DNA of 64,000 nucleotides, from assembly GCA_977020255.1 (NCBI GenBank), contig CDROCS010001406.1, forward strand, positions 62,001 to 126,000, in the 5' to 3' direction. This document shows, one piece after another, positions 4,803-24,420 of this stretch. Made by a program: the position numbers and the translations under genes. The notes under the pieces are model-generated. The model had not been told where the DNA came from. It ran no database searches and saw nothing but the letters and a program-made list of their open reading frames with translations. The DNA comes from Obrimoposthia wandeli (lineage: Eukaryota). Position 1 is the stretch's first letter. The number at the start of each line of letters is the position of its first letter.

Positions 4803-5677
4803 TGTTAATAAAGTTATTGTTAAAATTAATCAAATTATTAAGTTGAGTTGATATAATTTATCTTCTGGAAATATATATTAAATTGTATAATTTTCTTGTG
4901 TTTCAATTATTCCAATAGTAATATAACTAATCTTCTTCTGGAAATATATATTAAATTGTATAATTTCAAAAATTCCAATAAGTATATATTTTTATTACAA
5001 TTGTTTTACACTATGAACTTGCTGCTTTAAGTCTGCAGTTTATATATCAAAAAGACACACACAGAGAAGGCAGAATGCATTTACGGAAAATCAGTCGATA
5101 CTGCACCATCTCTATTATCACATTTATGCAGACAGATTTTTCGCACACTATCAATGATTATTATTTGTCCCGTTCTCCATTCTTATCAGCCGAGTTATCC
5201 TTATTGAATCCGGACTGCGAACAACTGCAAATTTCCTGATCACCGTTTCTGCTTCATCTCTACAAGGACACTTTTAAATTTCCATCTAACACTAAGGAGA
5301 GACAGAAAAGGAGAAAACGGCCGCGACATCAGCAACAAGGGAGAGGGAGACAAACATGTAGGTTGATGTGCAGGAGAGAGACGCCAAAAGTCAATTTGGG
5401 GAGAAATCGTCTTGTCAGAAAGGGAACCAACAACACTGGCTGCAGGGGAAAAGGTCACAGCCGCGATGGAGCATGGACTGGCTGAGGACTTAGTACTGGT
5501 TGATCTGCGACCATGAGAGATGGCAGTAGCATGCGAGAGGAGATTGACCACAATATTTACTGGTCCCGCATACACACCCACACACTGCACCTGCGCAAAC
5601 AACATCCGTCTCTACGCCAGCCCTGTGTCTGAGTGCAAACCCAAAATTGCCGCTGTTAAATGCCAAAGTGCATCGCA
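4803..5677 (-). repeat. 3' LTR (LTR-A)
   Basis: On the + strand it runs TGTTAATAAA...AATGCCAAAGTGCATCGCA (TG..CA), with the same terminal motifs as 17777-18786. It is preceded on the - strand by the purine-rich GATTGAGGGAATT (PPT-like), has a TATA-like GATATATAAA, and contains a ~73 bp internal duplication (4861/4934). Confidence 0.65.
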
Positions 5678-5984
5678 AATTCCCTCAATCGCCCCTTAAT
5701 TAAGGGAACAATCAATCTCCCCAAAACAACCCTAACACAATAATCAAACGCTTTCTCATTCCCAACAATCCTATGGGGCAAACAAAGTCAGACCTCTGAC
5801 ATTTTTTAAAACAAGAATAAAAATAATGTCCCGTTTAGCATATAATTGTCCAAAGTGACTTTTACAAAAATAAATTGTTCGAGTCTGTTAATGTAAAGAT
5901 AAAAAATAAAACATTGATTTATACTTTGCATCCACAAGCAATAATACATTTAGTGAATTATGCATAGTAAAATATCTTACTAAT

Positions 5985-7112
5985 CTAAAGGTTGTCCTCA
6001 GAATCAGAGGAGCAAATGTCTACGACTTCAGGCAGGTTATCATTGGCAATGCAGGGGAGAGAGACTGTCAGTCCACATTCTTCTATTAGCTCTTGCTCTT
6101 TATGGAGGAAAATTTTTCGGGTCCATTGTGTGTATATGAGGCTAGAGTGGGTATTCTTTTGTATTTCTTTATTGAAATACCACGAGACCATTCGAGCAAG
6201 TCCAGCTTGTTCTTTACGGTTCATCTCTAATTGAATAGTTCGTGTTGCTCCTAGATCCACCATGTGCGAAAAATCGTTTTTCTGCAGTCCTAAAACTTTG
6301 AGATCGTTGGTTATTCCCGTTCCTACGAAAATGTTGTCTCTTAGCAAGGATTGGACGCGTTCTAACAGTTCGACAGAATCAGGTTGGTTTCTTAACTTTC
6401 GTTCGTTAAGACCCGTTATTCTTGTCACATAATTCCTGATTCTGTCTCTGCTATTGCATTTTGTATCCAAAACGATTTGTCCGCTTCTATTCATTATAGT
6501 AATGCTGGCTAGGGTGGGTTGTTTATTCATTTTTACTACCATTTCACAATCGACAAAAAATATTTGAGGATTGTTGGGGATGATATTCAAATGGCAGACT
6601 TGAATGGGTTTAGGTTGCACATTTTGCTCTATGAATAATATGTTATTTCCACCCGACAAACGAATCATCAAATCGGGAGTTATTTGATGTCTCATCAACC
6701 GGTAAGAGTGGTTTTGCAGGAGAAGGACAGAGAAATGTTTGCTTTTCTTGTGTTTTAAAAATCCACGGCCTTTTGCTACGTGAATCTCAATGTCCGTGCA
6801 TGTAGGTAAGAATTTCATCAACTCAAACAGTCTTTGTTCTGTTGGCTTTTTGCTATTTTTGTTGAGAATTATGCTTTGTCTTGGGGTGTCTCTTAACTTG
6901 ATGCTATTTGGAAGCTGGGTCTGATTGTCAAAAATCTTTATTCGTTAATGGTTATGGAAATACCTTGTTCCAAACTGCCTTATTTTTCCATAAAGGAACT
7001 TAGCCATTTTTGCCATTTCTGGACGTTGTTCTGCTAACTGGACTGACTTCTCTCTCTTACCCTGCGGCACAACCTGCCAGTTCAAATGAGGATTTGTGCT
7101 TGTGGGTTCCAT
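5985..7112 (-). pseudogene. DEDDh 3'-5' exonuclease (REX4/ISG20-like) carried inside the retroelement
   Basis: ORFs 6945-7178 and 5985-6821 are in the same frame, joined by 41 open codons and one TAA (6945-6947). Motifs: ExoI FVDCEMV, TRITGL, ExoII VGTGITNDLKVL, ExoIII THSSLIY (expected Asp is Tyr). The ATG at 7112 directly follows a polypyrimidine tract and CAG. Confidence 0.8.
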
Positions 7113-7546
7113 CTGTAGGGTATACAGATATAGTAAAAAAAAATGTTGATTTTTACATGCAAATATAAAAATTGTCAAATGTCTATCAAATGAAATGTTC
7201 CTGTCAGTTTATTTGTCTCTTTTTGTTAATCAAAAGTCTGTAAATCATTTTAGTCTTTTATGTAACAAGTTCAATCAAACAGGTATATAAATAAGATATA
7301 ATTTTTCATTCTTTAATACATATTCTTATTACTGGTGTTTTCAATATCAATATATACAATGTACATACTTATATAAATATATTCATTTCTATTTATTCTT
7401 AATTTTATTATCACCACTTCAACTAAAGCTAATGAATATTAATACCCATTCATAAACAAATTTCGTCTCCAAAAATATGCCATAAGCCCAAACTCATTCT
7501 CAATTTTCTTTTCTTTTATATTTTAATTTACTCACTGGGGATTTTA

Positions 7547-7855
7547 CTAATTTTCACACCCGGAATCATCACTTTCTCCCGGTTGAAATCCCATCAAACG
7601 ATTAATTACTGATCTCAATGATACAAGAGAGTTTAATGCTTCTCTGAGTCGTCGTACTAATAATTCCTGATTTGTTTGGCTATGTTATAATCTTTCAATT
7701 GCAACGTCAAAAGCATTATTCATTCGCTCACATTCTATTTCCTTGTCTTTCAAATGCGATCTCAGATTTATATTTTCTATCAATAATTTATTTTCCCATT
7801 TCTTCTGTCTCTTATATCTTCTTCTATTATTTTGTACTATTTTCGAATTTCTCAT
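7547..7855 (-). pseudogene. Small basic/coiled-coil accessory ORF (102 codons, one internal stop)
   Basis: Manual translation: MRNSKIVQNNRRRYKRQKKWENKLLIEN...AIERL*HSQTNQELLVRRLREALNSLVSLRSVINRLMGFQPGESDDSGCEN*. The frame stays open across the single TAA at 7685-7687. Confidence 0.45.
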
Positions 7856-8469
7856 TTTCTAAAATGTTAATAAGTCTTAAGCTCATATTTTACTATTTTC
7901 TATTTAAACTAAACACATACGCACTTTCCTTTATCTACATTAAAATTACTTTATTTTATGATTAGTTTTTATTTTAGTATTTCAATTCATGTATTTCTTT
8001 TGACAATTTTATAAAGATTTTTTTCTATTTTCTGTTTATTGTTCTCAATTATTGTATTCATTGATATGTTAGATGAATTTGAAGAGCCAGGTATAATGGA
8101 TGTCATAAATGGGCCAGGTGGTTCACAATATTTAGTCCGATAATGTTTTTTGAAAATTGTGTTATTTTTTTACTTTAATAACCTTCCATGTTATTTTTAT
8201 GATTAACGTAAAGATTTCAATCATTATGATTTTTATAAAAATTTCCATGTTATTTATATTTTTTGAGTATTTTTGTTTACTAAAGTGTATTTTTAGACTT
8301 TCATTGAATGATTTATAGGGTATTGTTTTTGTTGTTTTTAATTGTTTGTTAATTGTTTTATTTTCTGTGATATTACTTTGATTTGTAATTTCATAAGTCT
8401 TTGTTGTGAATGTTGTAGTATGTGGTATTTGTTTTATGGTTGTTTCTTTGATATATTTCCTAATTGTAA

Positions 8470-9260
8470 TTACTGACCATTGGCCACAAAAAATCGTATT
8501 TTATTTTTATTTCCAAAAATCCTTAAGTTTGTTAGATCTTTACAAGTCTCAAATTGTTGTCCCCATTGTCTATACATTATTGGTTTGTTAGTAATTACAC
8601 ATTCTCTATTATCCAAAATTATTTTTTCTGGATATCTTATATTTTTTATAGTGATATTTGTTCTGATTTGTGTTTTTTCTAATTGTTTTTCGGCGTCTTT
8701 CCAAAAATGATCATTATGTCCTCTATATCTAATTCTAATGAGGGTTTTATCAAAATTATCTATTTTAAGTTGAAATTCCCAATTTATCATGATTTGATGT
8801 TTTGTTATATATTTTGCTGACGTTTTTAATATTGAAGCTAAGTATAAGTGAGTTTCTATAATTCTTTCATAGAGTGTTATATTTTTTAAATTCGACTTAA
8901 CTCTTATTTTGTATTGTGTTTCTGTTCTTAAAAATGGTATTATATAATTTTTTGATTCGATTTTGTAAATATTTATTATTTGATTTTTTTCAGATTGTAT
9001 TATTTGAATTCTTCCTAATTTTTTTTTGTAAAGAGTGATATTTTCAACTTTATTGATGTGATTTCAGGTATTATTGTAATAAGTCCAAAATTTTTTATGA
9101 GATGTGTTGATGAGTCGTATCTATTTATTTCGTCTTTTACTATTAATTGATTTTCATTCAGGTTTATAGCGTTTACTTTTATTAGGTTACTTTTTACTGC
9201 AACATATATTACTAATAACATCATTATTTTACATATTTCTTTTATTGATATTTTTATTGT
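8470..9260 (-). pseudogene. Degenerate ORF at the env position, starting with a signal-peptide-like segment fused to the integrase C-terminus
   Basis: The pol ORF continues past the GPY/F motif into [25 protein letters not shown]..., stops next to an A-run at ~9020, and protein-like reading resumes in 8470-8790 and its upstream frame. Confidence 0.45.
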
Positions 9261-12200
9261 ATTTCTGGTTTGATGACTCAAAATAGTTTTGTTTTGTTTT
9301 TGTGAGTTTTTTATTGTCAACATTTGTAGAACTGTATTATCATTAGTTGATCTTAAGTTATATTTGTGACTTTTTACTTTTGTATTCTCCTCAGGTATTT
9401 CTCGACATCTGTTTATATGTGCTCTTATTTCTTTTGATTTTGATTCATTATCTAGTTTAGCTGTTATGTTGGTTCCGTTGGTACTAATGACTGTATATGG
9501 TCCTTTGTATGGTTTTGATAATTTGTGAGACAATCCTACATTAATTTGTGGATTGTGAATCATCACTTTACTTCCACTTTTTATATTTGATGGCTTAGTT
9601 CTTCTATCATAATATTCTTTGTAATTTTCTTGTATGTTTTTTACAAATAATTTAGCTTTTTCAAATGCTAGTTTTATTCTTTCTCTAATTTCTATTTTGT
9701 ATTCAGGTATTTCTAGGTACTGTGTAGTAGGTTGTAGTAATGTTAGATCAATAGGCATTTGAGGATCTCTGAGGAACATAAGGTAAAAAGGTGTTTCTCC
9801 AGTAGATGCATGTACTGATGTTCTATATGCAAAAAGGCATGGAGGTATATGTAAATCCCAATCTATTTGGTTGTTGTTTGTATATGATACCATCATATAT
9901 TCGAGGGTTCTATAAAATCTTTCTACTAATCCATCGGTTTGATGGTGATATGGTGTTGTATTAATCTTTTTTATTTGAAAAATTTCAGCTATTGACGCTA
10001 ATACATTATTTATAAATTCAGGACCTTTGTCGGTTAATAATTTTCGGGGTGCACCGAAAGTAAAAATAATTTTTTCGACTAAAACCTTCGCGATGATTTC
10101 AGCCTTATGATCATGTGTTGGAAAAGCCTCTGGCCATCTTGTAAAATAATCAGAAAATACTATTATATATCGATTTCCTCGGGGTGTTTCAGGTAATGGT
10201 CCCATTACATCCATGGCAACAGTTTCCATGGGGGCTGATGGATAAGGTATTGGCTTTAAAGGTATTTTTGTGGTACGTAAAGTATTTTTCCGTTTAAGAC
10301 ATATTTCACATGTTTTACACCAATTTTTTACATCTTCTTTCATGTCAATCCAATAGTATTTTAAATTTAATCGTGAATGTGTCTTTTTTGATGATAAATG
10401 TCCTCCTAGGGCTCCATTATGATATTGAAGAAGTAATTGACACTGAATTTCTTTAGGAATAACTAGTGAATATAGATTTTTGTCATTTAAATAATATAAT
10501 ATTTCATTACTATATTTGTATCGTGATTCGTGAATTTTTAAATGTTTTCTTAATTTTTCATCTGTTGGTACTTCGTTTGTGCTAATGTATTTAGTTATTT
10601 GCTGAATTTCATTATCTTTGCTTTGAAGTTTAGTTATTACTTTTTCATCATATTTAGCTTGAATTATTGTAAAAAGATTTAATTCGATGTCATTTGCAGT
10701 TATTTCGTTTATTTCTTCTCTTATTCGTGATAGACAATCTGCATTAGCGTTAGATTTTCCTTTTCTATATTTTATTTCAATATCATATTTTTGTAAAATC
10801 AATGCCCATCTCATTAATCTAGATGTTGTATCCTTATGATTTAAAAGCCATTGTAATGGTCTTTGATCTGTGTAAACATAAACCTTTCGACCTAATAAGT
10901 AATGTTTAAAATGTTCCATTGCGAAACAAATAGCTAGGCATTCTCTTTCTATAGTTGAATAATTTATTTCATGTTTTTTAAGACCTCTGCTCGCATATGC
11001 TATCACATGATCTTTTTCGTTATTTTCCTGTTGTCCTAAAACTGCTCCTAACGCATAACCACTGGCGTCAGTCATAACTAAAAATGAGTTATTAAAATTA
11101 GGATATCTAAGTATAGGTTTTTCGATTAGTTTTTGTTTTAAATATTCATAAGATTCTTGTTGTTCTTTTTCCCATTCAAATTTTTCATCTTTTTTAATAA
11201 GTTTATTTAATGGTATTGCTATTTGTGCGAAATTTCTAATAAATCTTCGATAATATCCTGCAAGCCCTAAAAATTCCTGTATATTTTTTACTGTTTTTGG
11301 GATTGGAAAATTTTTAATCTTTTCTACATTACTCTCGTCTGGTTGTATTCCTTTTGCTGATACAGCATGTCCTAAGTAATTTACTTTATCTTTTATCCAT
11401 TCACATTTCTTTGGTTTTAGTTTTAATCCTGCTACCTGTAATCTTAAGAATACGTTTTCTAAATCTTTTAAATGTTCTTCAAAATTTTTTGAAAAAATAA
11501 GAATGTCATCGATATATACCATTACGTGATCTGCATCCATTAAAATATGGCTCATACATCTCTGAAATGTTGCTGGAGCTCCGGTTAATCCAAATGGTAA
11601 GACATTGAATTCATACAATCCTTCTCCTGTTGAGAAAGCTGTTTTATATTTATCTGACTCCTCAATTTCTATTTGCCAGTATCCACTCTGTAAATCCAAA
11701 GTTGTAAATACTTGTGCATTTTTTAGTTTGTCTAATATTTCATCAATTCTTGGCAGTGGATAAGTATCTTTGTGAGTGACTTCGTTTAGTTTTCTGTAAT
11801 CTACGCAAAATCTCAAAGAACCATCTTTCTTTTTACTAAAACAACAGGTGATGTCCATGCAGAAAAACTTCTTCTAACAATTTCATTTTCTAACATTCCT
11901 TTTATTTGTCTTTGAGCCTCATCTCTGTAGGCATATGGAATTCGGTAGGGTCGTTGTTTTATTGCTGTGTTTGTTGTTAACGGAAGATTATGTTTTATCA
12001 AATTTGTTCGACCTAAATCGTATTCATTTTTAGCAAATATTACATCATATTTTTCTGTTAAAGTTTTAAGTTTTGATTTTTCATAATCATTTAATTTAAT
12101 ATCGTTAAAATTTATCGTAGATTTATCTTCTATTTTTTCATTATCTATTAATTCAATATTTTCAATAACACTTATTTTTCCAAGACGTACTCCTTCCTTT

Positions 12201-12860
12201 AGATGAATTTCATTAATGTCTGCATTTAGGATTCTGATTGGTATTGTGTTGTTTTTTATTTTACAAATTATATTTGGCAAAACGTAGTTCAAGGTTTCTT
12301 GTTGATATTTATAAGGTTCAAATAATACATCTTTTTCTGTGATTATGTTAGTTTCTAGTTGTAACATTGTTTCTGTTCTTGGTTGGAGAATGATATCTCC
12401 TTTTATTTCTAACTCGTATTCATCTTTGGCGTTAGGTCTGTAATGTCTTTTATTTGATTTTTTTCAAAATCAAAGTGGAAATTATTTCCTAATCTTCTTA
12501 ATGTATCTATTCCTATGATCATTTGGCAAGGACAATTTTTCATTATTCTTGTAGGTATTTTTATGAATTTATTTCCTATTTTAAAAAAGACAGTCTAATT
12601 TTCCTATTATATCTACGGGTTGACCGTTTGCTGCTGTGACTTGACTATTTTCCTTAAGAAGAAGTAATTTTTGTTGTGTTTTTAAGAAAGATTCGTCTAA
12701 AACTGTTACGCTTGATCCTGTGTCAATTAAAGCTTTAAGTTTATATTCGTTAATTTCTACCTTTACATATGGTCGTTTATCGTTATCTTTTGATTTATTG
12801 TATATATTGTTGGTGCAGTTGATTTTTGTATAGTTGTTTTATCTATATATTTTTCTAAAT
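9015..12860 (-). pseudogene. pol: Gypsy pol (aspartic protease, RT, RNase H, integrase), frameshifted
   Basis: PR ALIDTGSS (DTG at 12716-12724); [39 protein letters not shown]; RNase [26 protein letters not shown]; IN H-H-C-C, MDVMGP, TDKGPEF, GLVER; GPY. Frameshifts near 12590 and 11830. Confidence 0.97.
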
Positions 12861-14841
12861 CAGGATATTGTGAAGATTCCGTTTTTTCTGTTTCTTTTGG
12901 TATTTGTAATTTTTTGTATATTTGTTTCTCGCATTTCATTTGATAATGTATTTACTATGTTTTGATGATGATTAAAAATAAGGAATTTTGCCAAAAATGG
13001 AAAACATCCTAAGATTAATTTCCATGTTAATCCTCCAACTTTATAAATATAATATGTTGATAAAATTTGACTTAGAAGAATCTTAAAGCAAATTAGTAGA
13101 GCATATATTCCAACTAATCCAGAAAATGCTTGTCCAAAAATTAAAATGTTACCCCATATTTTTGACATGGTGTTTTTAGTGGCTTTTATAAAATGATTTG
13201 GAGAAAGTAATAAGTCATAATCGGGACGGCTAATTCCGTCAGGTACTGATCTTTCTATGATTTGTGTTAAAATTCTGGATCTTATTTGTGGAAATAAAAT
13301 TTCTTTTCTTAACTTATCTATATCTTCCTGTATATAAATTCCTTTTGTGTTTAATTCGTTATCTGATTGTATATTGATGTCGTTGCTGAGAGTGGTTAAT
13401 TGTAATTTTTGTGGTTCTGCGACAATATCTCTTCTTGGAAGTGAAATCCAAATATCTTTTGAAATTTGATAATGAGGTGCCATTATGTTTGAGCAGTTTA
13501 TTTCTTTTATGCTAAAAGTGTTAAAAAGTATGATTCTAGTGATTGGTTTTACAAATAATGAATTATTTTTGTAAGAAATTGGTAATTCTTTTGTACATTT
13601 TTGATGATTTCTTATGTTAACTATTACTTTTTTACATTGATAAGTGTAAAACACTTCTCCCATTACTCTTCCAAAAGTACCGTCAGCTAATGGTAATAAT
13701 GGTGTTATTAATTCTGGGTTAGTAGCAATAATTGCCAATTTCGTTTTTAATATCTCCTGATTTAATTTACAATCATTCATTATGGTTTCTCTATATATTG
13801 CTTCTATTGTCATTAGTCCTTTGTGATAAAAATAATCTAATTTATTGTTAAAATAATCATATTTTTAATATCAAATTTAGTTGGTGTCGTTATGTATTTT
13901 TTCATTACTCAAATATATTCCTTTATAATTAGTTGTATAAACAGAGTGTCCACATCGGGATTCCTCTTTCTTTTTAATAAATCGCATTCCTGAACCTTGT
14001 TCAATAGACATTAATATAGTTGGAGTTGGTGTTTTACGTATTTTTCTAGTTCTATATATTTTATGTATGTCCTTTGGAACCTGTTGATCTAGTTCCGGAT
14101 CATCTCTAAATCTTTTTCCTTGAATTATTTGAAAAGTTTCTGATTTTAAATGTATTAATTTACATTGATCGATTTTTACTTTGTAGTAAAGTATTGAAGA
14201 ACCCGTGTTACAGTGACCCATGTTTGCTTCACAAAATGGCATTGTTACCATTGTGTTTGTAGAGGGGTCGAATGTTGCTTTGAAAGTTCTTAGTTCGACT
14301 TCAAAATTTTTAATAACTACCAAACCACTTTGCTTAACTCCCATTACTACATAAGTTCCTGTTGTACATTCTCCATCAGATTTAATCGTACCTACTACTG
14401 ATATCATTTGTTGAATTATTTTATTTTTCGCCGCTCGGACTTTAATTTCTCTATCTATTCTCAATTCTCCTGTTGCGAAAGCATCTTTACAATTTAAAGC
14501 GTCAACTATTATTGGTGTTTTTCCTAATGCTGGTTTTACTATTGAATTGTGACTATGTTGTCCACAATATGTTATAAATGTCTCTACATGTACTCTACAT
14601 TCAAAAACTTCTGCATATATGAAATCTGTTTCCTGATATACTTGATACAACTTAGTATTTTGGATTTTTACCTCATTTGGGTCAGGTCTGCACATTGCTG
14701 TAAATCCATTAAAGAATATTTATTTTGAATTTTATATTTTGAACAATCATATGCTTCTAAAGCATTAATTGGTTTTATCATGTTCATAATTAGACATATT
14801 ATTAATATTATCTGAATAATTTTCCATAATTTTTTCATCAT
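12860..14841 (-). pseudogene. Chuvirus-like (gB-related) envelope glycoprotein, ~660 codons, frameshifted
   Basis: Manual translation from ATG 14841: signal peptide MMKKLWKIIQIILIICLIMNMIKPINA then LEAYDC...SLMDLQQC. A frameshift leads into 13877-14695 (C.V.V...ITYCGQHSHNS, NCKDAFATG) and on into 12860-13813 (YFNNKLDY, C.LNQEILK, GEVFYTYQC, TM FSGLVGIYALL). These motifs match my recollection of Chuviridae glycoproteins. Confidence 0.85.
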
Positions 14842-14914
14842 TTTATTAAGATTATTTGTATTCTTAAAAATTTTAGTTTTTTAATTTTTATTGTTTTACG
14901 ATTTTTCTTGTGTT

Positions 14915-16564
14915 TTACTTTCTTTCTTGTGTTTGAGTAGTTTGGTTTGTTTTTGTGATTGTATATTTATTTTTTTGTAATGTCAAACAACCATCTCTAA
15001 ACATGTCTCCAAATTCGGATTGTAAGTTTGTTCTATCTGTTTGTGGTTCATTGTTATGGCATTGTTGGTGTATTTCTCTGTAGCGATTATCCATTTCTTT
15101 AAGTCGTAATTTTAACAATGCTAATTCGTCTGTGTTTGGAGTTGTTTCTGTATTTTCTATAGTGTGAATAGGGTTTCTTGGGGTATATTGTTGATCTTGA
15201 GTACTGAATTGTACTGTTTTTTGAACTTGTGGTTGTTGTTTTATTGTTGTGTTTCCAAATTGATTCATCATTGTGTTTAATTTTCCACAGTCATCGGTGT
15301 TGTGATTTTTCATATTACAAATCTTACAAAATTTTGTATTATTATTAAAATATCTATTTTGATTATTGTCATAATTATTTGGTTTATTGAAGTTATTATT
15401 CCTTGGTAGTGTATTATTACTCTGTCTATTTATTAATTTTCTACAAGTTTCAATTGTGTGATTGTCTTTTTTGCAAAATCTGCAAAATTTTATGTTACTT
15501 AATTTTCGACAATTTTCTATTGTATGAGTTTTGGAGTCCACAATTTGTGCATTTTTGAAAAAATCTTTGTGTAAATTGTGAGTTTGCAAAATTTTTGTTT
15601 GTCTGGTTTCTATAAAATTATTTCTTGGTGGTCTAAATTGTTGAGGATTTTGAAAATTATATTGAGTGTCTTGGTTAAAATTCCTAGATTGGTTGTAGTT
15701 TGGTGGCGTTTGTGGTCGTTCTATTTTTTCAAAAGATAAAGCTGAAACTTCGGTTTGCTGTATCATATTCAGTCTTGCTTCTACTAGTTGAGCTTTTCCT
15801 ATAGCCTGTTGAAAGTTTTCTACTTCTAGTAAGGCAGGGTGATCTCTAATTTTGTTATTTAATCCATGTAAAAATTGATGTAAAAGTAATCGCTCTCTTT
15901 GTGCTTCTTCTATTTCGGGAAAAGATTTTAATGCTAGTCGTCGTAATTCGACTGCGAATATATTTGTGGGTTCTCCTACATGTTGCTCTCGTTGTCTAAA
16001 TTGATTTAAGTAGTTCTGGTCGGACTGTGCTCCTAAAACCATATTTTGGAAATGCTGGACTAAGTGTTCCCATGTGTCTTTTTGTAGATTTGTTAGTCCT
16101 CTATAAATGGTTAGGGCAGTGCCTTTTAGGTATGCTGGAAAAACTCTAAGTTTTTCTTGGTCTGTCCATTCGAATGCTTGAGCAAAAGAATCATATATAT
16201 TCAAGAATTCTGGTAAAGATGTTTTATCGCCATTAAATGCGTCTAGTGGTATGTTTAATTTATGATTTGCCATTTGAGGTACTTCGTTTATTTGTTCGTT
16301 ATTTATTTCTATGTTAGGTGGTACTGGTTCTGCCACTGTTTCCGATGTTTCTGACGAGTTGTCCGAGTCAGATGTTTGTGGTAAAGATAAACTTTCTGTA
16401 TCTGAATTTGATGTTAGGTTTTGGTTTTCAGAGTCGGTTGAAATTAAGCGATCCGTGTGTTGGTGGACTAACGGAGTTTCAGGGAAAAATTCGTTATTTG
16501 TTCTAAAATTTATCTGGGATTTAGGTCTCTGTGGTAGTGTTTCACTTGTGTTAGTTCTTACCAA
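14915..16564 (-). CDS. gag: Gypsy gag (capsid domain plus CCHC zinc knuckles)
   Basis: FNGD..FL, W...EKL, YLKGTAL, R.Q..GE....FA..LRRLA, HQFL.GL. Knuckles CRFCKKDNHTIETC and CKICNMKNHNTDDC, plus a third (CTNCGLQN-H-TIENC) visible in an offset frame. Confidence 0.92.
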   Translation of the reverse strand: MVRTNTSETLPQRPKSQINFRTNNEFFPETPLVHQHTDRLISTDSENQNLTSNSDTESLSLPQTSDSDNSSETSETVAEPVPPNIEINNEQINEVPQMANHKLNIPLDAFNGDKTSLPEFLNIYDSFAQAFEWTDQEKLRVFPAYLKGTALTIYRGLTNLQKDTWEHLVQHFQNMVLGAQSDQNYLNQFRQREQHVGEPTNIFAVELRRLALKSFPEIEEAQRERLLLHQFLHGLNNKIRDHPALLEVENFQQAIGKAQLVEARLNMIQQTEVSALSFEKIERPQTPPNYNQSRNFNQDTQYNFQNPQQFRPPRNNFIETRQTKILQTHNLHKDFFKNAQIVDSKTHTIENCRKLSNIKFCRFCKKDNHTIETCRKLINRQSNNTLPRNNNFNKPNNYDNNQNRYFNNNTKFCKICNMKNHNTDDCGKLNTMMNQFGNTTIKQQPQVQKTVQFSTQDQQYTPRNPIHTIENTETTPNTDELALLKLRLKEMDNRYREIHQQCHNNEPQTDRTNLQSEFGDMFRDGCLTLQKNKYTITKTNQTTQTQERK

Positions 16565-17759
16565 TCTAGTCTGAATGCGTCTCCAGTGAAGATTAGCACT
16601 ACGTTTAGATTTTGAAATCTTTGTGTATTGTTCACTATTATCCTGCGTACTGGGTCGAAAATTAATTTATGTGTTTATATATTGTTGTCTAGTTTTGTTG
16701 AAAACGATTAAATAAATGTTATATTTTAAATAAATTAATTTTCAAAAACAGTCAGGAATTATTTCTGCTCTGTGATCAAAATACAGCTCGGCCTTATGAT
16801 AATCGATTACCGTGATTTGAGCTGCACTTTCAACCAAAGTAATAGAAAAATTTCTAACTTATTAATATATTTTTAAGTAAAATCTGTTATCACTATTTTT
16901 ATTTTAAAAACCGATATTGAAAATTTGTAAATTTTAATAAACTATTAATATATTTTAAACAAACACAGGATAATTTTGAATCAAAAACTATTGTCTCCAA
17001 ACTATGAAAATTTGTTAATTTGTTAACCCTAGTGTATTTTATTTCTAACTTGAATTAGTAAAAATATTAAAATAAATTTGTGAAAATCCTAAATCTAAAT
17101 AAAGTAATATGTTTGTATTTTAATTCAAAAATAGTCCTAATATTTTATAACTAAATTTCGAATTTCTTATTTTCACTTCTACAGAAAAATGAATTCAAAT
17201 ATGAATTATGTATTTTTATTATTATTGTTTCTATTTTACAAATGTATATATATTGCTCTAAATTTTTATTTTAATAGATCGAGACAATGTAGTTGGGCTT
17301 AAAATAATAATGAATACTCCTTGCAAAACCTCTGGCGGTATGTACCACAAAGTATTTTTACTTTACTTTAATTATTACAACCAAGAAATTATTCTAAAAA
17401 AAATACAGTATAATTTTATTCTAAAAATACAATATAATTTTTATTAAAAATGAATTAAAACGTATATCTAATATTACAAACTATGAGGGACTTTACTCAA
17501 AACACAGTACCTATCAACAAATGCATCAAAAATATTATAGTACGGGTTTTGAAAATAAATTCTATTTAAAATTCCAAAGAAAATATACTTATGTCTACAA
17601 TATAGTATATTTTTTGTGTTTAACACTAATCCAGAAAATAAAAATAAAATACGAATATATTAAACAAGATATATATCTATAATATTACAAATGTATAAGA
17701 AAAATCAACAATGTTAAAAATAAAATTAAAATAAAACTCAAACAAAATTACCGTGCTCG

Positions 17760-17775
17760 TTCTTCGGGCTCACCA
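17760..17775 (-). promoter_or_regulatory. Primer-binding site
   Basis: The - strand reads ...TTAACA T TGGTGAGCCCGAAGA: TGG one base after the LTR's terminal CA. The priming tRNA was not identified. Confidence 0.75.
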
Positions 17776-17831
17776 ATGTTAATAAACGATATTCCAAGGG
17801 TAAAGACGATATCTTCAAACAAACTGCGAAC

Positions 17832-18220
17832 CAGAATAAATATATTTCTTCAAAAAATATTGTCAATGATTAAATCAATTGGTAGCAAAATCAAATGGAT
17901 ATAATTCTTGTTTCTCCTATTATGACTTTTAGGCAAAGTAATATTTCTTGTTGTAAAATTTTTGAATTCAGAATAAATATATTTCTTCAAAAAATATTGT
18001 CAATGATTAAATCAATTGGTAGCAAAATCAAATGGATATAATTCTTGTTTCTCCTATTATGACTTTTAGGAAAAGTAATATTTCTTGTTGTAAAATTTTT
18101 GAATTCAGAATAAATATATTTCTTCAAAAAATATTGTCAATGATTAAATCAATTGGTAGCAAAATCAAATGGATATAATTCTTGTTTCTCCTATTATGAC
18201 TTTTAGGAAAAGTAATATTT
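17832..18220. repeat. 137-bp tandem repeat, ~2.8 near-identical copies
   Basis: Units starting CAGAATAAATATATTTC at 17832, 17969 and 18106. Confidence 0.95.
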
Positions 18221-18699
18221 TAGTTTCTAAAATTAGAAATATCAGTTAAATCAAAATTTATATGCAAATTCCCAAAACTGTCGTCTTATATCTGGCAGCT
18301 GCACAGATTGACTAGGCTGGAAAAGCAGGCAATTCCCGGCTCTACACACACGTACAGATGTGCAGCCGGGAATTATCGTCACCCGATTTCTGTTTCTGGG
18401 CAGGAAGTAAATGGTGCTTTAAAAATATACACACATACACAGCACAAAGAATAGGTGAGAAGGGAGAGTGAGTGAGCAAGGGATTGTGTGAGCGATTGAG
18501 TGAGTAGTGAGAGTGAATGAGTGAGTTGAGTGATGTGTTAATGTTGAGTGAGTGTGTGTGTGTGAATGGTGCACTTGCGCACACTAACACCACATGTCGA
18601 CGATATTCGTCGGCACATGAAAGGGGAATCTTTTCCCTGGCTTTATTATTGTTATCTCTGGCTTCGCGGAATCCACCGCGAAGTTAGAGATAACACGCC

Positions 18700-18751
18700 A
18701 TCTCCCTGATGAGCCCGGCAGGGCGAAACGGGCTTTTTTCCCGTCGGAGAT
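18700..18751 (+). ncRNA. Type I hammerhead ribozyme (HHR1)
   Basis: ATCTCC-CTGATGA-GCCC[GGCA]GGGC-GAAA-CGGG[CTTTTTT]CCCG-TC^-GGAGAT. It has the full catalytic core and perfect stems I, II and III; predicted cleavage is after GUC at 18745. Confidence 0.93.
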
Positions 18752-19313
18752 TGATCACTCTATTGACTAAAATGCCAAAGTGCACAATTCTAAAAATCGG
18801 AACTTTTCCCTAATTAAGGAAAGTTCCCAATTAACTTTTAATTAATTAATTCTCTTTTTTCTTTTATTTCTTTAAAAATTTTATATTTTTATTTTTCTTT
18901 TTTAAAACAATTATTTAATATATTTTCCCAACACATATATACATGTATAAGAATAAATGTAGTACGTGACTTGTTACTATTGATTACATAAATATGCAAG
19001 TATTTGCAAGATAGATGCAGTACGTGACTGTCTTTGTTAGATATATAAACGAACGTTTAAACATATTTATCATATTATATAATACTTTATTTTATAAGTA
19101 GATAGTTTAATTTAATTTAGATTAATTTAGTTTAAACATATTTATCAAATTATATAATACTTTATTTTATAAGTAGATAATTTAGTTAAAATAAATTATA
19201 TAAGCTTGAACACACACACACACACGATATGTCTTTTGGTGAAGACTGCGTGTTAATACCACCTTTAGATAAAAAGATATATAGTTTTAAAGTTTGTGAC
19301 TAAAAATAGAATA

Positions 19314-22249: not shown

Positions 22250-23075
22250 GTTTATCTAGGAAAAATTTCTTGAAAATCGTATTCAAATACAATCAAATTG
22301 AATATGGTTAATTTTTGAAATCAAAATATACTTGAAAATCTTCTGTAATAACTGAAATTGTTATAAGGGAACATTTTCTTGAATATGGGTAATTTCTGAA
22401 ATCAAAATGGACTTGAAGATTTTTAATAAAATCAGATTGAATCAGTTGAAAATTTTTATTTTAGCTTCTATCAATGAACCATATATACAGAAAGTAAATC
22501 AATAGTTAATTTGGGCCACTTTGTTGATACTGAGCCATGGCAAACCAATCAAAATGGTTAAAGAGATAGAGCAGGAGGGAGATAGATGCGATGTAAAGAG
22601 GGACATCTTGGCACAGTTTTTCCAGAGATAGATTGTAGTCGTTGGTTGTGTCAGACGATGGTAGGATGGATGGACAGGCACAAATTGTTTGGGAAGGAAT
22701 AGTGGAAGGGGAATTGTGTTGTTGGGCGGACATCTCCACAGATGAGAGGAGAAGACAAAGTTCATCATCTTCGTCTTCTTCAGTAGGGAACAGTCGTTGT
22801 CGCTGCCCACTCGCTAAATCTGAATGAGAGCCATTCTGCATCTGGCTCCTTTGTCACATGAGGAAGGTAGAATGGAGGATTGGAAGGGGAAGAAGCCTGG
22901 GAGAAACTGAATTTGTGCTGGGCGGAAAATTCCAGCGAGATTAAAGGATTTACTTATCTCCGATCTGCCTATATAAAATTCACTTTTTCTGCCGCCTTCC
23001 TGACGAGCCTGGAAAGGCGAAACGGGTTTTTTACCCCGTCGGAAGCTGATAAATCAATTACCTTGAATGCACTTT
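22250..23075 (-). repeat. Solo or degenerate LTR-like island (LTR-C), related in architecture to LTR-A and LTR-B
   Basis: Same polarity as the other two: AT-rich short repeats, then a GA-rich segment, then a hammerhead, then TGCACTTTGG (inverted form of the LTR-terminal CCAAAGTGCA). Boundaries are uncertain. Confidence 0.45.
22996..23045 (+). ncRNA. Type I hammerhead ribozyme (HHR2)
   Basis: CTTC-CTGACGA-GCCT[GGAA]AGGC-GAAA-CGGG[TTTTTTAC]CCCG-TC^-GGAAG. The core is intact, with predicted cleavage after 23040. Stem I is imperfect, as if one C had been lost. Confidence 0.85.
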
Positions 23076-24118: not shown

Positions 24119-24269
24119 CGATGAGTAAAATTTAGTTGAATAAATTGAAGTGAAATTAATAACAAGTTTTATTCAACTAAATTTGAAAAGTGCTAATATC
24201 TAGAAGACTAGATATAACAACAAAGTTCATCACAGAGACTATTGGAAGATTTTGTAATATTTGTAAGTT

Positions 24270-24420
24270 CAATGTTTGTTATTTTTTGTAATTTTGTTTC
24301 TCAAATTTCGTTTGAAAATGAGTTTACTGTATTTTGAAGTCGATTAAAAATAAGAAATTTGGCTAAAAGTTGGAAACATCCTAAGATTAATTTCCATGTT
24401 AAACCACAAACTTGATATTA
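24270..24420 (-). pseudogene. Fragment of the chuvirus-like glycoprotein C-terminus
   Basis: Encodes GLTWKLILGCFQLLAKFLIFN..QN.VN..SNE, versus GLTWKLILGCFPFLAKFLIFN..QN.VN..SNE at ~12930-13045. The DNA similarity is directly visible. Confidence 0.88.

What the first reader, a model, noticed from the sequence alone, without database searches (positions are those of the whole stretch)
18700..18751. Canonical hammerhead ribozyme inside an animal Gypsy LTR, on the antisense strand
Seen: a complete type I hammerhead ~35 nt inside the outer (U3) end of the PBS-adjacent LTR, on the + strand, while PBS, gag and pol are all on the - strand. Stems II and III are 4 bp with real loops, so it should be able to fold as a monomer. 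Established: hammerheads occur in plant retrozyme LTRs and in Penelope-like elements. I am not aware of them being described antisense in autonomous animal Ty3/Gypsy LTRs, but could not check the literature. Inference: the element may cut its own antisense or read-through RNA (limiting dsRNA and small-RNA silencing), or an element with two such LTRs could release a unit-length, circularisable antisense RNA.
Basis: partly seen in the sequence, partly recalled or inferred. Interest (0 to 1): 0.9.

Follow-up and report, generated by a model that had tools for sequence, protein, structure and literature searches.

The report
Backwards hammerhead ribozyme in Gypsy LTRs
A complete self-cutting RNA motif (hammerhead ribozyme) lies on the strand opposite the genes in the terminal repeats of a young, very abundant virus-like jumping gene of this animal. 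This placement is not described in the papers I could search, and neither cutting nor a purpose has been shown.

Summary
The hammerhead at 18700-18751 (+) is real. It has a full catalytic core, stems of 6, 4 and 5 bp, and a cut site between 18745 and 18746. It scores 32.4 bits against Rfam RF00163, just under the cut-off of 34; sister copies reach 38.5.

It is a family feature, not a one-off. An exact hammerhead pattern occurs 3,714 times in this 1.35-Gb genome, against 0 for the reversed control. Three full-length copies carry it in both LTRs. Twenty-five diverged copies keep the fold through compensatory changes.

The repeat is a true LTR of a gag-env-pol-exonuclease Ty3/Gypsy-like element: a PBS sits next to it, and a full-length sister copy has a 4-bp target duplication. 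PBS and all genes lie on the opposite strand.

- The LTR runs 17777-18933, so the ribozyme is 182 nt inside its end, not 35.
- This copy is a chimera whose other LTR (4803-5767) has no hammerhead.
- A hammerhead-free sister family also has a full-length copy, and relatives in two metagenome contigs lack the motif. It is therefore an accessory module.

The most likely role is cutting antisense RNA that crosses the LTR. No RNA data were available. Other windows of this scan noted the same motif in this genome.

The parts
18700..18751 (+). Type I hammerhead ribozyme; predicted cleavage between C18745 and G18746
   Evidence: RF00163 32.4 bits, E 1.4e-6. Own covariance model R1 78.7 bits. The minimum-energy fold is the hammerhead junction.
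17777..18933 (-). 5' LTR of the element (TGTT...AACA ends; 1157 bp). The hammerhead complement is at LTR positions 183-234, upstream of the best sense TATA at position 672, so it is probably in U3. The transcription start is not known.
   Evidence: Alignment to other genomic copies ends at 18933. Flanks differ after CCCAACA. TATA and poly(A) motif scan.
17758..17775 (-). Primer binding site, one base after the LTR end. Its first 12 nt are shared with the PBS of a related element in contig L067, which continues into a tRNA T-loop complement.
   Evidence: Read from the sequence; L067 PBS.
18650..18695 (+). 20-bp hairpin directly upstream of the hammerhead; its arm sequence is conserved across LTR families
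   Evidence: Fold. The arm pattern gives 7,521 genomic matches against 1 for the control. In 2,641 cases it is followed by the 5' half of the hammerhead.
18768..18784 (+). Conserved box AAATGCCAAAGTGCA downstream of the ribozyme. It is also present in the hammerhead-free 3' LTR at 5659-5673.
14915..16564 (-). gag (two CCHC zinc knuckles; no Pfam hit)
   Evidence: 92% identical to the C151 copy.
12860..14695 (-). env between gag and pol (Monjiviricetes-type class III fusion glycoprotein), split into two ORFs in this copy
   Evidence: PF24664, E 7e-56 and 2e-22.
9015..12367 (-). Protease ORF and RT-RNaseH-integrase ORF
   Evidence: Pfam RVT_1, RT_RNaseH, Integrase_H2C2, rve. A single 1666-aa ORF in the C151 copy.
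5985..6821 (-). DEDDh (RNase_T) exonuclease ORF downstream of pol. Only 44-45% identical to that of the family of the 5' half, so this is the chimeric part.
4803..5767 (-). 3' LTR of this copy, from a different family: same TGTTAATAA start, CCCAACA end and conserved box, but no hammerhead and no hairpin
22997..23043 (+). Second, diverged hammerhead in a degenerate LTR-like remnant. It is the only part of the LTR with similarity elsewhere in the window.
   Evidence: BLAST 83% over 48 nt; regex scan; R1 66.6 bits.

Best explanation
Shown:
- 18700-18751 (+) encodes a structurally complete type I hammerhead.
- It is a heritable part of the LTR of a young, highly amplified Ty3/Gypsy-like endogenous retrovirus-like family. 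The gene order is LTR-PBS-gag-env-PR/RT/RH/IN-small ORF-DEDDh exonuclease-LTR, about 14 kb in all.
- It lies on the strand opposite the PBS and all genes, 182 nt from the LTR's outer end, most likely in U3.
- Several diverged LTR subfamilies keep the fold through compensatory changes.

Inferred:
- The ribozyme acts on antisense RNA that crosses the LTR. Such RNA could start at a divergent or antisense LTR promoter, or read in from the flank.
- It cuts after C18745. The capped upstream piece (hairpin cluster plus ribozyme, ending in a 2',3'-cyclic phosphate) is separated from a 5'-OH downstream piece.
- In a 3' LTR the cut falls just before the antisense RNA enters the coding body. In a 5' LTR it falls just before the RNA leaves into host DNA.
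- The likely benefit to the element is less stable antisense RNA, hence less double-stranded RNA and fewer small-RNA precursors, and less read-out into host genes.
- The module is an accessory, not needed for transposition.
For: - Motif and fold.
- Three full-length copies carry the identical hammerhead in both LTRs, same strand, 12,979-13,235 nt apart. Their LTR pairs are 99.2-99.5% identical. The C151 copy has a 4-bp TSD (TAGT) and a PBS next to the 5' LTR.
- Genome-wide, the exact pattern occurs 3,714 times against 0 for the control. Same-strand pairs 12-14 kb apart occur in at least three subfamilies with different helix I and III sequences.
- Covariation on 25 diverged copies: 90.4% of cells paired against 32-50% when partners are slid. 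Nine of 15 pairs change on both sides, 40 compensatory cells, and 0 of 500 shuffles reach the observed score.
- Among the core positions checked, only N7 varies freely; C17 is C or U and never G.
- Every clade protein hit that is assignable to the hammerhead's own element lies antisense to it. The three sense-strand hits sit in flanking or nested elements, or are unresolved.
- The hammerhead strand of full-length copies carries almost no ORFs of 60 aa or more, so the antisense RNA is non-coding.
- A type I topology leaves only 6 nt of ribozyme on the downstream product, as in laboratory 5'-processing ribozymes (established knowledge).
Against: - No RNA evidence at all. Antisense transcription and cleavage are unproven.
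- In its 146-nt context the minimum-energy prediction prefers an alternative pairing over the hammerhead.
- The G.U versus A.C asymmetry in the helices is weak (27 against 18), so the helices alone do not fix the selected strand. The core does.
- The diverged copies were picked with the hammerhead model, which inflates apparent core conservation.
- A hammerhead-free sister LTR family has a same-strand LTR pair 13.7 kb apart. Related elements in contigs L068 and L070 have none. Any benefit is therefore dispensable.
- A cut in the 5' LTR comes after the antisense RNA has already copied the whole body, so it would not prevent double-stranded RNA there.
Confidence: 0.5

Rival explanations
1. Passenger or relic. 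A hammerhead from another ribozyme-bearing element (retrozyme or Penelope-like) was captured once by an ancestral LTR. It is carried along without helping the element.
For: Hammerhead-free LTRs share the same ends and the conserved box, and that family has a full-length copy. Related elements elsewhere lack the motif. Type I hammerheads are common in animal retrozymes and Penelope-like elements (PMC7229834).
Against: A neutral 52-nt insert should decay while LTRs diverge beyond alignability. Instead the fold is kept by compensatory changes in several amplifying subfamilies. It is also the best-conserved LTR segment: identity 0.6-0.79 against about 0.15-0.35 in most of the surrounding LTR (with ascertainment bias). 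Its position relative to the hairpin and the LTR end is constant.
Confidence: 0.2
2. 3'-end maker for a short LTR-derived antisense RNA. The useful product is the upstream fragment, running from an antisense start in the LTR through the hairpin cluster to the ribozyme. The cut gives it a defined 2',3'-cyclic-phosphate end.
For: The 20-bp hairpin directly upstream is conserved with the ribozyme in thousands of LTRs. A type I hammerhead stays attached to the upstream product.
Against: The hairpin arms are conserved in sequence as a DNA palindrome, so it may be a protein-binding site in U3 rather than an RNA element. Group B LTRs have a different, shorter hairpin. No RNA data.
Confidence: 0.13
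3. Retrozyme-like excision. Antisense read-through across both LTRs is cut at both ribozymes, releasing a unit-length RNA of about 13 kb (shorter in deleted derivatives). A host RNA ligase then circularises it.
For: Full-length copies have two same-strand hammerheads 12,979-13,235 nt apart. Hammerhead products have ligatable ends, and plant LTR retrozymes work this way (PMC4918200).
Against: The RNA would be antisense, so its PBS would be in the wrong orientation for tRNA-primed reverse transcription. 13 kb is far larger than known ribozyme circles (170-800 nt). Seven AATAAA/ATTAAA signals lie on the + strand inside the LTR upstream of the ribozyme. The window's own copy has only one hammerhead LTR.
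Confidence: 0.1
4. The conserved feature is really a sense-strand or DNA element, such as a U3 enhancer or an RNA structure of the genomic RNA's 3' end. The hammerhead on the other strand is then incidental.
For: The reverse complement also folds into a three-way junction (-20.9 kcal/mol). Helix covariation is strand-neutral, and the G.U/A.C asymmetry is weak.
Against: The unpaired core positions were invariant or nearly so, with free variation only at N7 and C or U (never G) at position 17. That is the specific signature of hammerhead catalysis. The exact hammerhead pattern has 3,714 hits against 0 for the control.
Confidence: 0.04

Closest known systems
Plant LTR retrozymes (Cervera, Urbina and de la Pena 2016, PMC4918200)
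   Same: A hammerhead inside each LTR of an LTR-type retroelement with PBS, PPT and 4-bp TSD, linked to the Ty3/Gypsy machinery.
   Different: Retrozymes are non-coding and 600-1000 nt long. They carry type III hammerheads on the same strand as the PBS, and they occur in plants. Here the element is autonomous and about 14 kb, the hammerhead is type I and antisense to PBS and genes, and the host is an animal.
Metazoan non-LTR retrozymes and satellite-type type I hammerheads (PMC7229834; bioRxiv 10.64898/2026.07.22.740005)
   Same: A type I hammerhead in an animal genome, in thousands of copies, carried by a retroelement.
   Different: Those are 170-400-nt tandem repeats without LTR, PBS or PPT, and are linked to Penelope-like elements. 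Here the hammerheads are 13 kb apart in true LTRs.
Penelope-like element and Terminon terminal-repeat hammerheads (Cervera and de la Pena 2014; PMC6431247)
   Same: A hammerhead in the terminal repeat of an autonomous retroelement.
   Different: Those elements have a PLE reverse transcriptase with or without GIY-YIG. Their hammerheads are sense-strand, minimal, with a very short helix III, and act as dimers. Here the enzyme is Gypsy RT-RNaseH-integrase, helix III has 5 bp, and the motif is antisense.
GAG-ENV-POL Ty3/Gypsy 'errantiviruses' of Platyhelminthes, Bryozoa and Nematoda (PMC13524379) and planarian Burro elements (PMC6431247)
   Same: A class III fusion glycoprotein gene between gag and pol, LTRs, and a Gypsy pol. 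This is the element family that hosts the ribozyme.
   Different: In PMC13524379 the words 'hammerhead', 'ribozyme' and 'exonuclease' do not occur. In PMC6431247 hammerheads are mentioned only for Terminons and Penelope-like elements, not for Burro.
Antisense transcription from retroviral 3' LTRs (HTLV-1 HBZ, HIV-1 antisense RNA; from my own knowledge)
   Same: Antisense RNA that starts in or near the 3' LTR and runs through U3 into the provirus body. This is the kind of substrate proposed here.
   Different: Those RNAs encode proteins and are not ribozyme-processed. Here the antisense strand is essentially ORF-free.

Membership tests
Hammerhead ribozyme, type I (Rfam RF00163) | Catalytic core C3-U4-G5-A6-N7-G8-A9, G12-A13-A14, A15.1-U16.1 pair, H17 not G | tested here: met
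   All core positions are present at 18706-18712, 18725-18728 and 18744-18745. Across 25 copies only N7 varies freely.
Hammerhead ribozyme, type I (Rfam RF00163) | Three helices around the core, helix I open and helices II and III capped | tested here: met
   Helices of 6, 4 and 5 bp, supported by covariation.
Hammerhead ribozyme, type I (Rfam RF00163) | Score at or above Rfam's gathering threshold (34 bits) | tested here: inconclusive
   This copy scores 32.4 bits, penalised for an 11-nt insert in helix III. Sister copies in the genome reach 35.8-38.5 bits.
Hammerhead ribozyme, type I (Rfam RF00163) | Self-cleavage giving 2',3'-cyclic phosphate and 5'-OH ends | not testable with these tools
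Plant-type LTR retrozyme | Non-autonomous, no protein-coding capacity | tested here: not met
   gag, env, PR-RT-RH-IN and exonuclease ORFs lie between the LTRs.
Plant-type LTR retrozyme | Hammerhead (type III) on the same strand as PBS and PPT | tested here: not met
   The hammerhead is type I and on the opposite strand to the PBS and genes.
Plant-type LTR retrozyme | A hammerhead in each LTR; 4-bp TSD | tested here: met
   Met in full-length sister copies. Not met in the window's own chimeric copy.
Metazoan non-LTR retrozyme | Short tandem repeats (about 170-400 bp) without LTR, PBS or PPT | tested here: not met
   Hammerheads are about 13 kb apart in LTRs with a PBS.
Penelope-like element pseudo-LTR | PLE-type RT (with or without GIY-YIG endonuclease) and sense-strand minimal hammerheads | tested here: not met
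   RVT_1 + RT_RNaseH + Integrase_H2C2 + rve. Helix III has 5 bp, and the motif is antisense.
Ty3/Gypsy env-carrying (GAG-ENV-POL) LTR retroelement | LTR pair with TSD, tRNA PBS, CCHC gag, PR-RT-RH-IN pol, env between gag and pol | tested here: met
   The same gene order occurs in related contig L067.

The most novel reading that the evidence does not exclude
The paired antisense hammerheads form a ribozyme-based counter-silencing device of an animal endogenous retrovirus-like element. They excise the whole antisense copy of the provirus as one RNA with a 5'-OH and a 2',3'-cyclic phosphate end, possibly circularised. That would keep it out of 5'-phosphate-dependent small-RNA biogenesis and decay. 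It would be the first ribozyme used by an autonomous LTR element against host silencing.
Probability: 0.12. Interest if true: 0.9.

Novelty: new variant of a known kind. Interest (0 to 1): 0.62.

Why it matters
Self-cleaving ribozymes are known in retroelement terminal repeats of plant LTR retrozymes, animal non-LTR retrozymes, Penelope-like elements and Terminons. There they always lie on the element's own RNA strand, where they process or circularise it.

Here a catalytically complete hammerhead has been kept on the opposite strand of an autonomous, env-carrying Ty3/Gypsy element. It has persisted through the radiation of several LTR subfamilies and into thousands of young copies.

If it is active, an LTR retroelement has been selected to process RNA made against it. 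That would open a testable link between ribozymes and antisense, small-RNA or read-out control.

The genome also provides a natural comparison: a sister family with homologous LTR ends but no ribozyme. At the least, the finding extends the known genomic habitats of type I hammerheads in animals and gives ribozyme searches a new context to check.

Tried and rejected
- **Rfam gathering scan of the whole window:** no hit, because this copy is 1.6 bits under the threshold. The E-value mode found it.
- **Second copy of the LTR in the window:** BLAST found none. The explanation is a chimeric element with a foreign 3' LTR.
- **RNA evidence:** two run searches found only DNA-like runs of one sample.
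- **Exact-protein look-up of the exonuclease,** to find transcript contigs: not on record.
- **Larger flanks for 28 diverged hammerhead loci:** Orientation was judged from the 3-kb loci already held plus one 7-kb fetch.
- **Apparent sense-strand protein hits near three hammerheads (L049, L050, L058):**
  - L058 is an LTR nested in another element's gag.
  - L050 is a truncated LTR abutting a different Gypsy element.
  - L049 is unresolved.
- **Hammerhead in relatives from other DNA (L067/L070, L068):** none found, even with filters off on L070.
- **Identifying the host from mitochondrial-type COX1:** the best matches were only about 60-65% identical, so the species remains unknown. The gag-env-pol order points to flatworm-, bryozoan- or nematode-type elements (PMC13524379), which is an inference.
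- **Translation role for the cut** (cap-independent translation after self-cleavage, PMC13725137): rejected as unlikely, because the hammerhead strand has almost no ORFs.
- **Extended helix I pairing and loop-loop contacts:** no pattern was consistent across subfamilies on inspection.
- **Promoter assignment on the + strand:** not attempted beyond a motif scan. The genome is AT-rich, and the available promoter tool is bacterial.

Full report
**1. The motif**

The + strand at 18700-18751 reads as a textbook type I hammerhead:
- Helix I is 6 bp (18700-18705 with 18746-18751).
- The core CUGAUGA is at 18706-18712.
- Helix II is 4 bp, capped by GGCA.
- GAAA is at 18725-18728.
- Helix III is 5 bp including A15.1-U16.1, capped by a 7-nt loop.
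- The GUC triplet ends at C18745.

The default Rfam scan of the window was blank. A focused scan gave Hammerhead_1 (RF00163) over exactly these coordinates at 32.4 bits against a gathering score of 34, E 1.4e-6, with the whole model matched. The shortfall comes from the long helix III insert.

The isolated 52-mer folds into the hammerhead junction as its minimum-energy structure. In a 146-nt context the prediction prefers a competing pairing. A structural scan of both strands of the window finds only one more hammerhead, at 22997-23043 on the + strand.

**2. What it sits in**

All coding capacity is on the - strand:
- gag with two CCHC knuckles (14915-16564)
- a Monjiviricetes-type class III fusion glycoprotein, split in two (12860-14695)
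- protease (11813-12367)
- RT-RNaseH-integrase (9015-11858)
- a DEDDh exonuclease ORF (5985-6821)

A PBS follows the repeat at 17758-17775 on the - strand.

The repeat itself is multi-copy. A search of the 1.35-Gb assembly gave 40 scored matches at 94-100% identity out of 3,125 first-look candidates, many in same-strand pairs about 13 kb apart. I fetched three such pairs:
- Their repeats are 99.2-99.5% identical.
- All three end in CCCAACA. In the C151 copy the repeats begin with TGTTAATAA, the PBS complement abuts the inner edge of one repeat, and the element is flanked by a 4-bp duplication (TAGT).

So this is a genuine LTR of a young Ty3/Gypsy-like element of about 14 kb. The order is LTR-PBS-gag-env-pol-small ORF-exonuclease-LTR.

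**3.

- **LTR boundary.** Alignment of the other copies runs to 18933, not 18786. The LTR is therefore 17777-18933, and the ribozyme ends 182 nt inside it. The 'GTGCACA' taken as the terminus is part of a conserved internal box.
- **U3 assignment.** In sense coordinates the hammerhead complement is at LTR positions 183-234. That is upstream of the best sense TATA at position 672. The U3 assignment is therefore likely but unproven.
- **A chimeric copy.** The window's copy matches the family from about 9000 to 17789. Below that it switches to another family: the pol C-terminus is 60-73% identical and the exonuclease 44%. Its 3' LTR (4803-5767) has the same ends and the same box but no hairpin and no hammerhead. 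Retrotransposition regenerates identical LTRs, so this copy was most likely rearranged after insertion (established knowledge of LTR replication).

**4. A family feature under constraint**

My covariance model finds the identical hammerhead in both LTRs of all three full-length copies. The cut sites lie on the same strand, 12,979-13,235 nt apart.

| Exact pattern searched in the genome | Matches | Reversed control |
|---|---|---|
| Upstream hairpin arm | 7,521 | 1 |
| Hairpin arm followed by the 5' half of the hammerhead | 2,641 | 0 |
| Hammerhead-specific pattern | 3,714 | 0 |

The last list shows at least three abundant subfamilies with different helix I and helix III sequences, each with same-strand pairs 12-14 kb apart.

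An Rfam-driven genome scan supplied 30 diverged loci. Many share the upstream hairpin, and 17 of 28 have a CCCAACA-type LTR end 124-228 nt downstream of the core (three further regex matches lay inside the ribozyme and were not counted).

On 25 diverged hammerheads:
- The proposed pairs are formed in 90.4% of cells, against 32-50% when partners are slid.
- Nine of 15 pairs change on both sides, giving 40 compensatory cells.
- None of 500 shuffles reaches the observed covariation.
- Among the core positions checked, only N7 varies freely. C17 is C or U and never G.

Across 13 otherwise barely alignable LTRs the hammerhead is the best-conserved block, at 0.6-0.79 identity against about 0.15-0.35 in most of the surrounding LTR.

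Caveat: these loci were chosen with a hammerhead model, so core conservation is partly circular. The compensatory helix changes and the exact-pattern counts are not.

**5. Strand relation**

Wherever a protein of this clade could be assigned to the hammerhead's own element, it lies on the opposite strand. This holds for the exonuclease in ten 3' LTR copies of the family, and for L045, L047 and L036-L038. A group B LTR (L058/L069) has the PBS complement upstream and the CCCAACA end downstream, as in the window. Two of the three apparent sense-strand hits are neighbouring or nested elements, and the third (L049) is unresolved.

**6. It is dispensable**

The hammerhead-free LTR family has a same-strand pair 13.7 kb apart elsewhere in the genome. 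The closest pol relatives outside this genome are 53-55% identical. One of the two contigs examined (L067/L070) shows the same gag-env-pol order and the same PBS start. Neither contig (L067/L070, L068) has a hammerhead in the parts held, which include a 3' LTR start in L068 and the 5.4 kb upstream of the PBS in L070.

**7. Mechanism**

Shown: a complete, conserved ribozyme motif on the antisense strand.

Inferred: it cuts antisense RNA that crosses the LTR. A type I topology leaves the ribozyme on the upstream fragment and frees a downstream RNA with a 5'-OH.
- In a 3' LTR the cut separates any capped antisense leader from the RNA that goes on to copy the element body.
- In a 5' LTR it severs RNA leaving into host DNA.

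The antisense strand has almost no ORFs. That argues against a translation role of the kind recently shown for RNA viruses (PMC13725137).

I rank a role in limiting antisense or read-out RNA first. After it come a neutral passenger, a 3'-end maker for a short LTR RNA, and retrozyme-like excision of a unit-length RNA.

**8. Comparison with the known**

Full-text searches found hammerheads in four contexts:
- plant LTR retrozymes (type III, sense strand, non-coding)
- animal non-LTR retrozymes
- Penelope-like elements
- Terminons

GAG-ENV-POL Gypsy elements are described in flatworms, bryozoans and nematodes, and in planarian Burro elements, without any ribozyme. No paper found places a hammerhead in the LTR of an autonomous Gypsy element. 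The library does not hold most subscription journals, so absence there is not proof.

I class the finding as a new variant of a known kind. Other windows of this scan noted the same motif in this genome. One earlier follow-up doubted that the repeats are the Gypsy element's own LTRs. The paired, TSD-flanked, PBS-adjacent copies shown here settle that point for this family.

Noticed in passing
window 4803-9000: The element is a chimera. From about 9000 downwards (pol C-terminus, exonuclease ORF, 3' LTR) it belongs to a different family from its 5' part. Its two LTRs are unrelated at the BLAST level. The flanking 4-mers are CATG and CATA, a 3 of 4 match.
   Followed up: partly
window 5985-6821; L062 3027-4196: A DEDDh (RNase_T) exonuclease ORF lies downstream of integrase, on the element's sense strand. 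It is 389 aa in full-length copies and is preceded by a 131-aa ORF. This is unusual cargo for a Gypsy-like element.
   Followed up: partly
window 17832-18242: Three tandem 137-bp repeats sit inside the LTR. Other copies of the same family carry different short repeats (about 48-60 bp) at this place, so it is a hypervariable LTR segment. On the + strand these repeats carry six of the LTR's seven AATAAA/ATTAAA motifs.
   Followed up: partly
window 18650-18695: A 20-bp hairpin lies directly upstream of the ribozyme. It contains two G.U pairs that would be C.A mismatches on the other strand. Its arm sequence occurs 7,521 times in the genome. It may be an RNA element or a palindromic DNA site.
   Followed up: partly
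L043, L044, L059 (contigs C367 239360 and 356054; C1474 164987): A separate hammerhead family in the same genome appears to have an open helix III (type III topology) and a capped helix I. It has a different context, with no hairpin or LTR-end motif.
   Followed up: no
contig C46, 2105-37072: Six same-strand hammerheads of one subfamily are spaced 4.1, 6.7, 13.3, 4.1 and 6.7 kb apart. This looks like a duplicated block or an array of deleted derivatives.
   Followed up: no
whole assembly; contig C1406 12575-13914: The assembly holds dozens of stop-free, apparently bacterial-type COX1 genes, so it probably includes many bacterial contigs. The window's own contig carries COX1 pieces with in-frame TGA and TAA stops (a likely nuclear mitochondrial insert) about 48 kb upstream of the window.
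   Followed up: no
group B LTRs, e.g. L039, L054: In one LTR group the 3' strand of helix I (GGAGGU) can also pair with an ACCUCC about 20 nt downstream, inside a conserved ACCTCCCTGATTGTGGGCATTTCAG box. That alternative hairpin could compete with helix I after cleavage or regulate it.
   Followed up: no
window 24244-24417: A short - strand fragment resembles the env end / pol start of the element family, 1.2 kb from the second hammerhead. It is the remains of another, degenerate element.
   Followed up: partly
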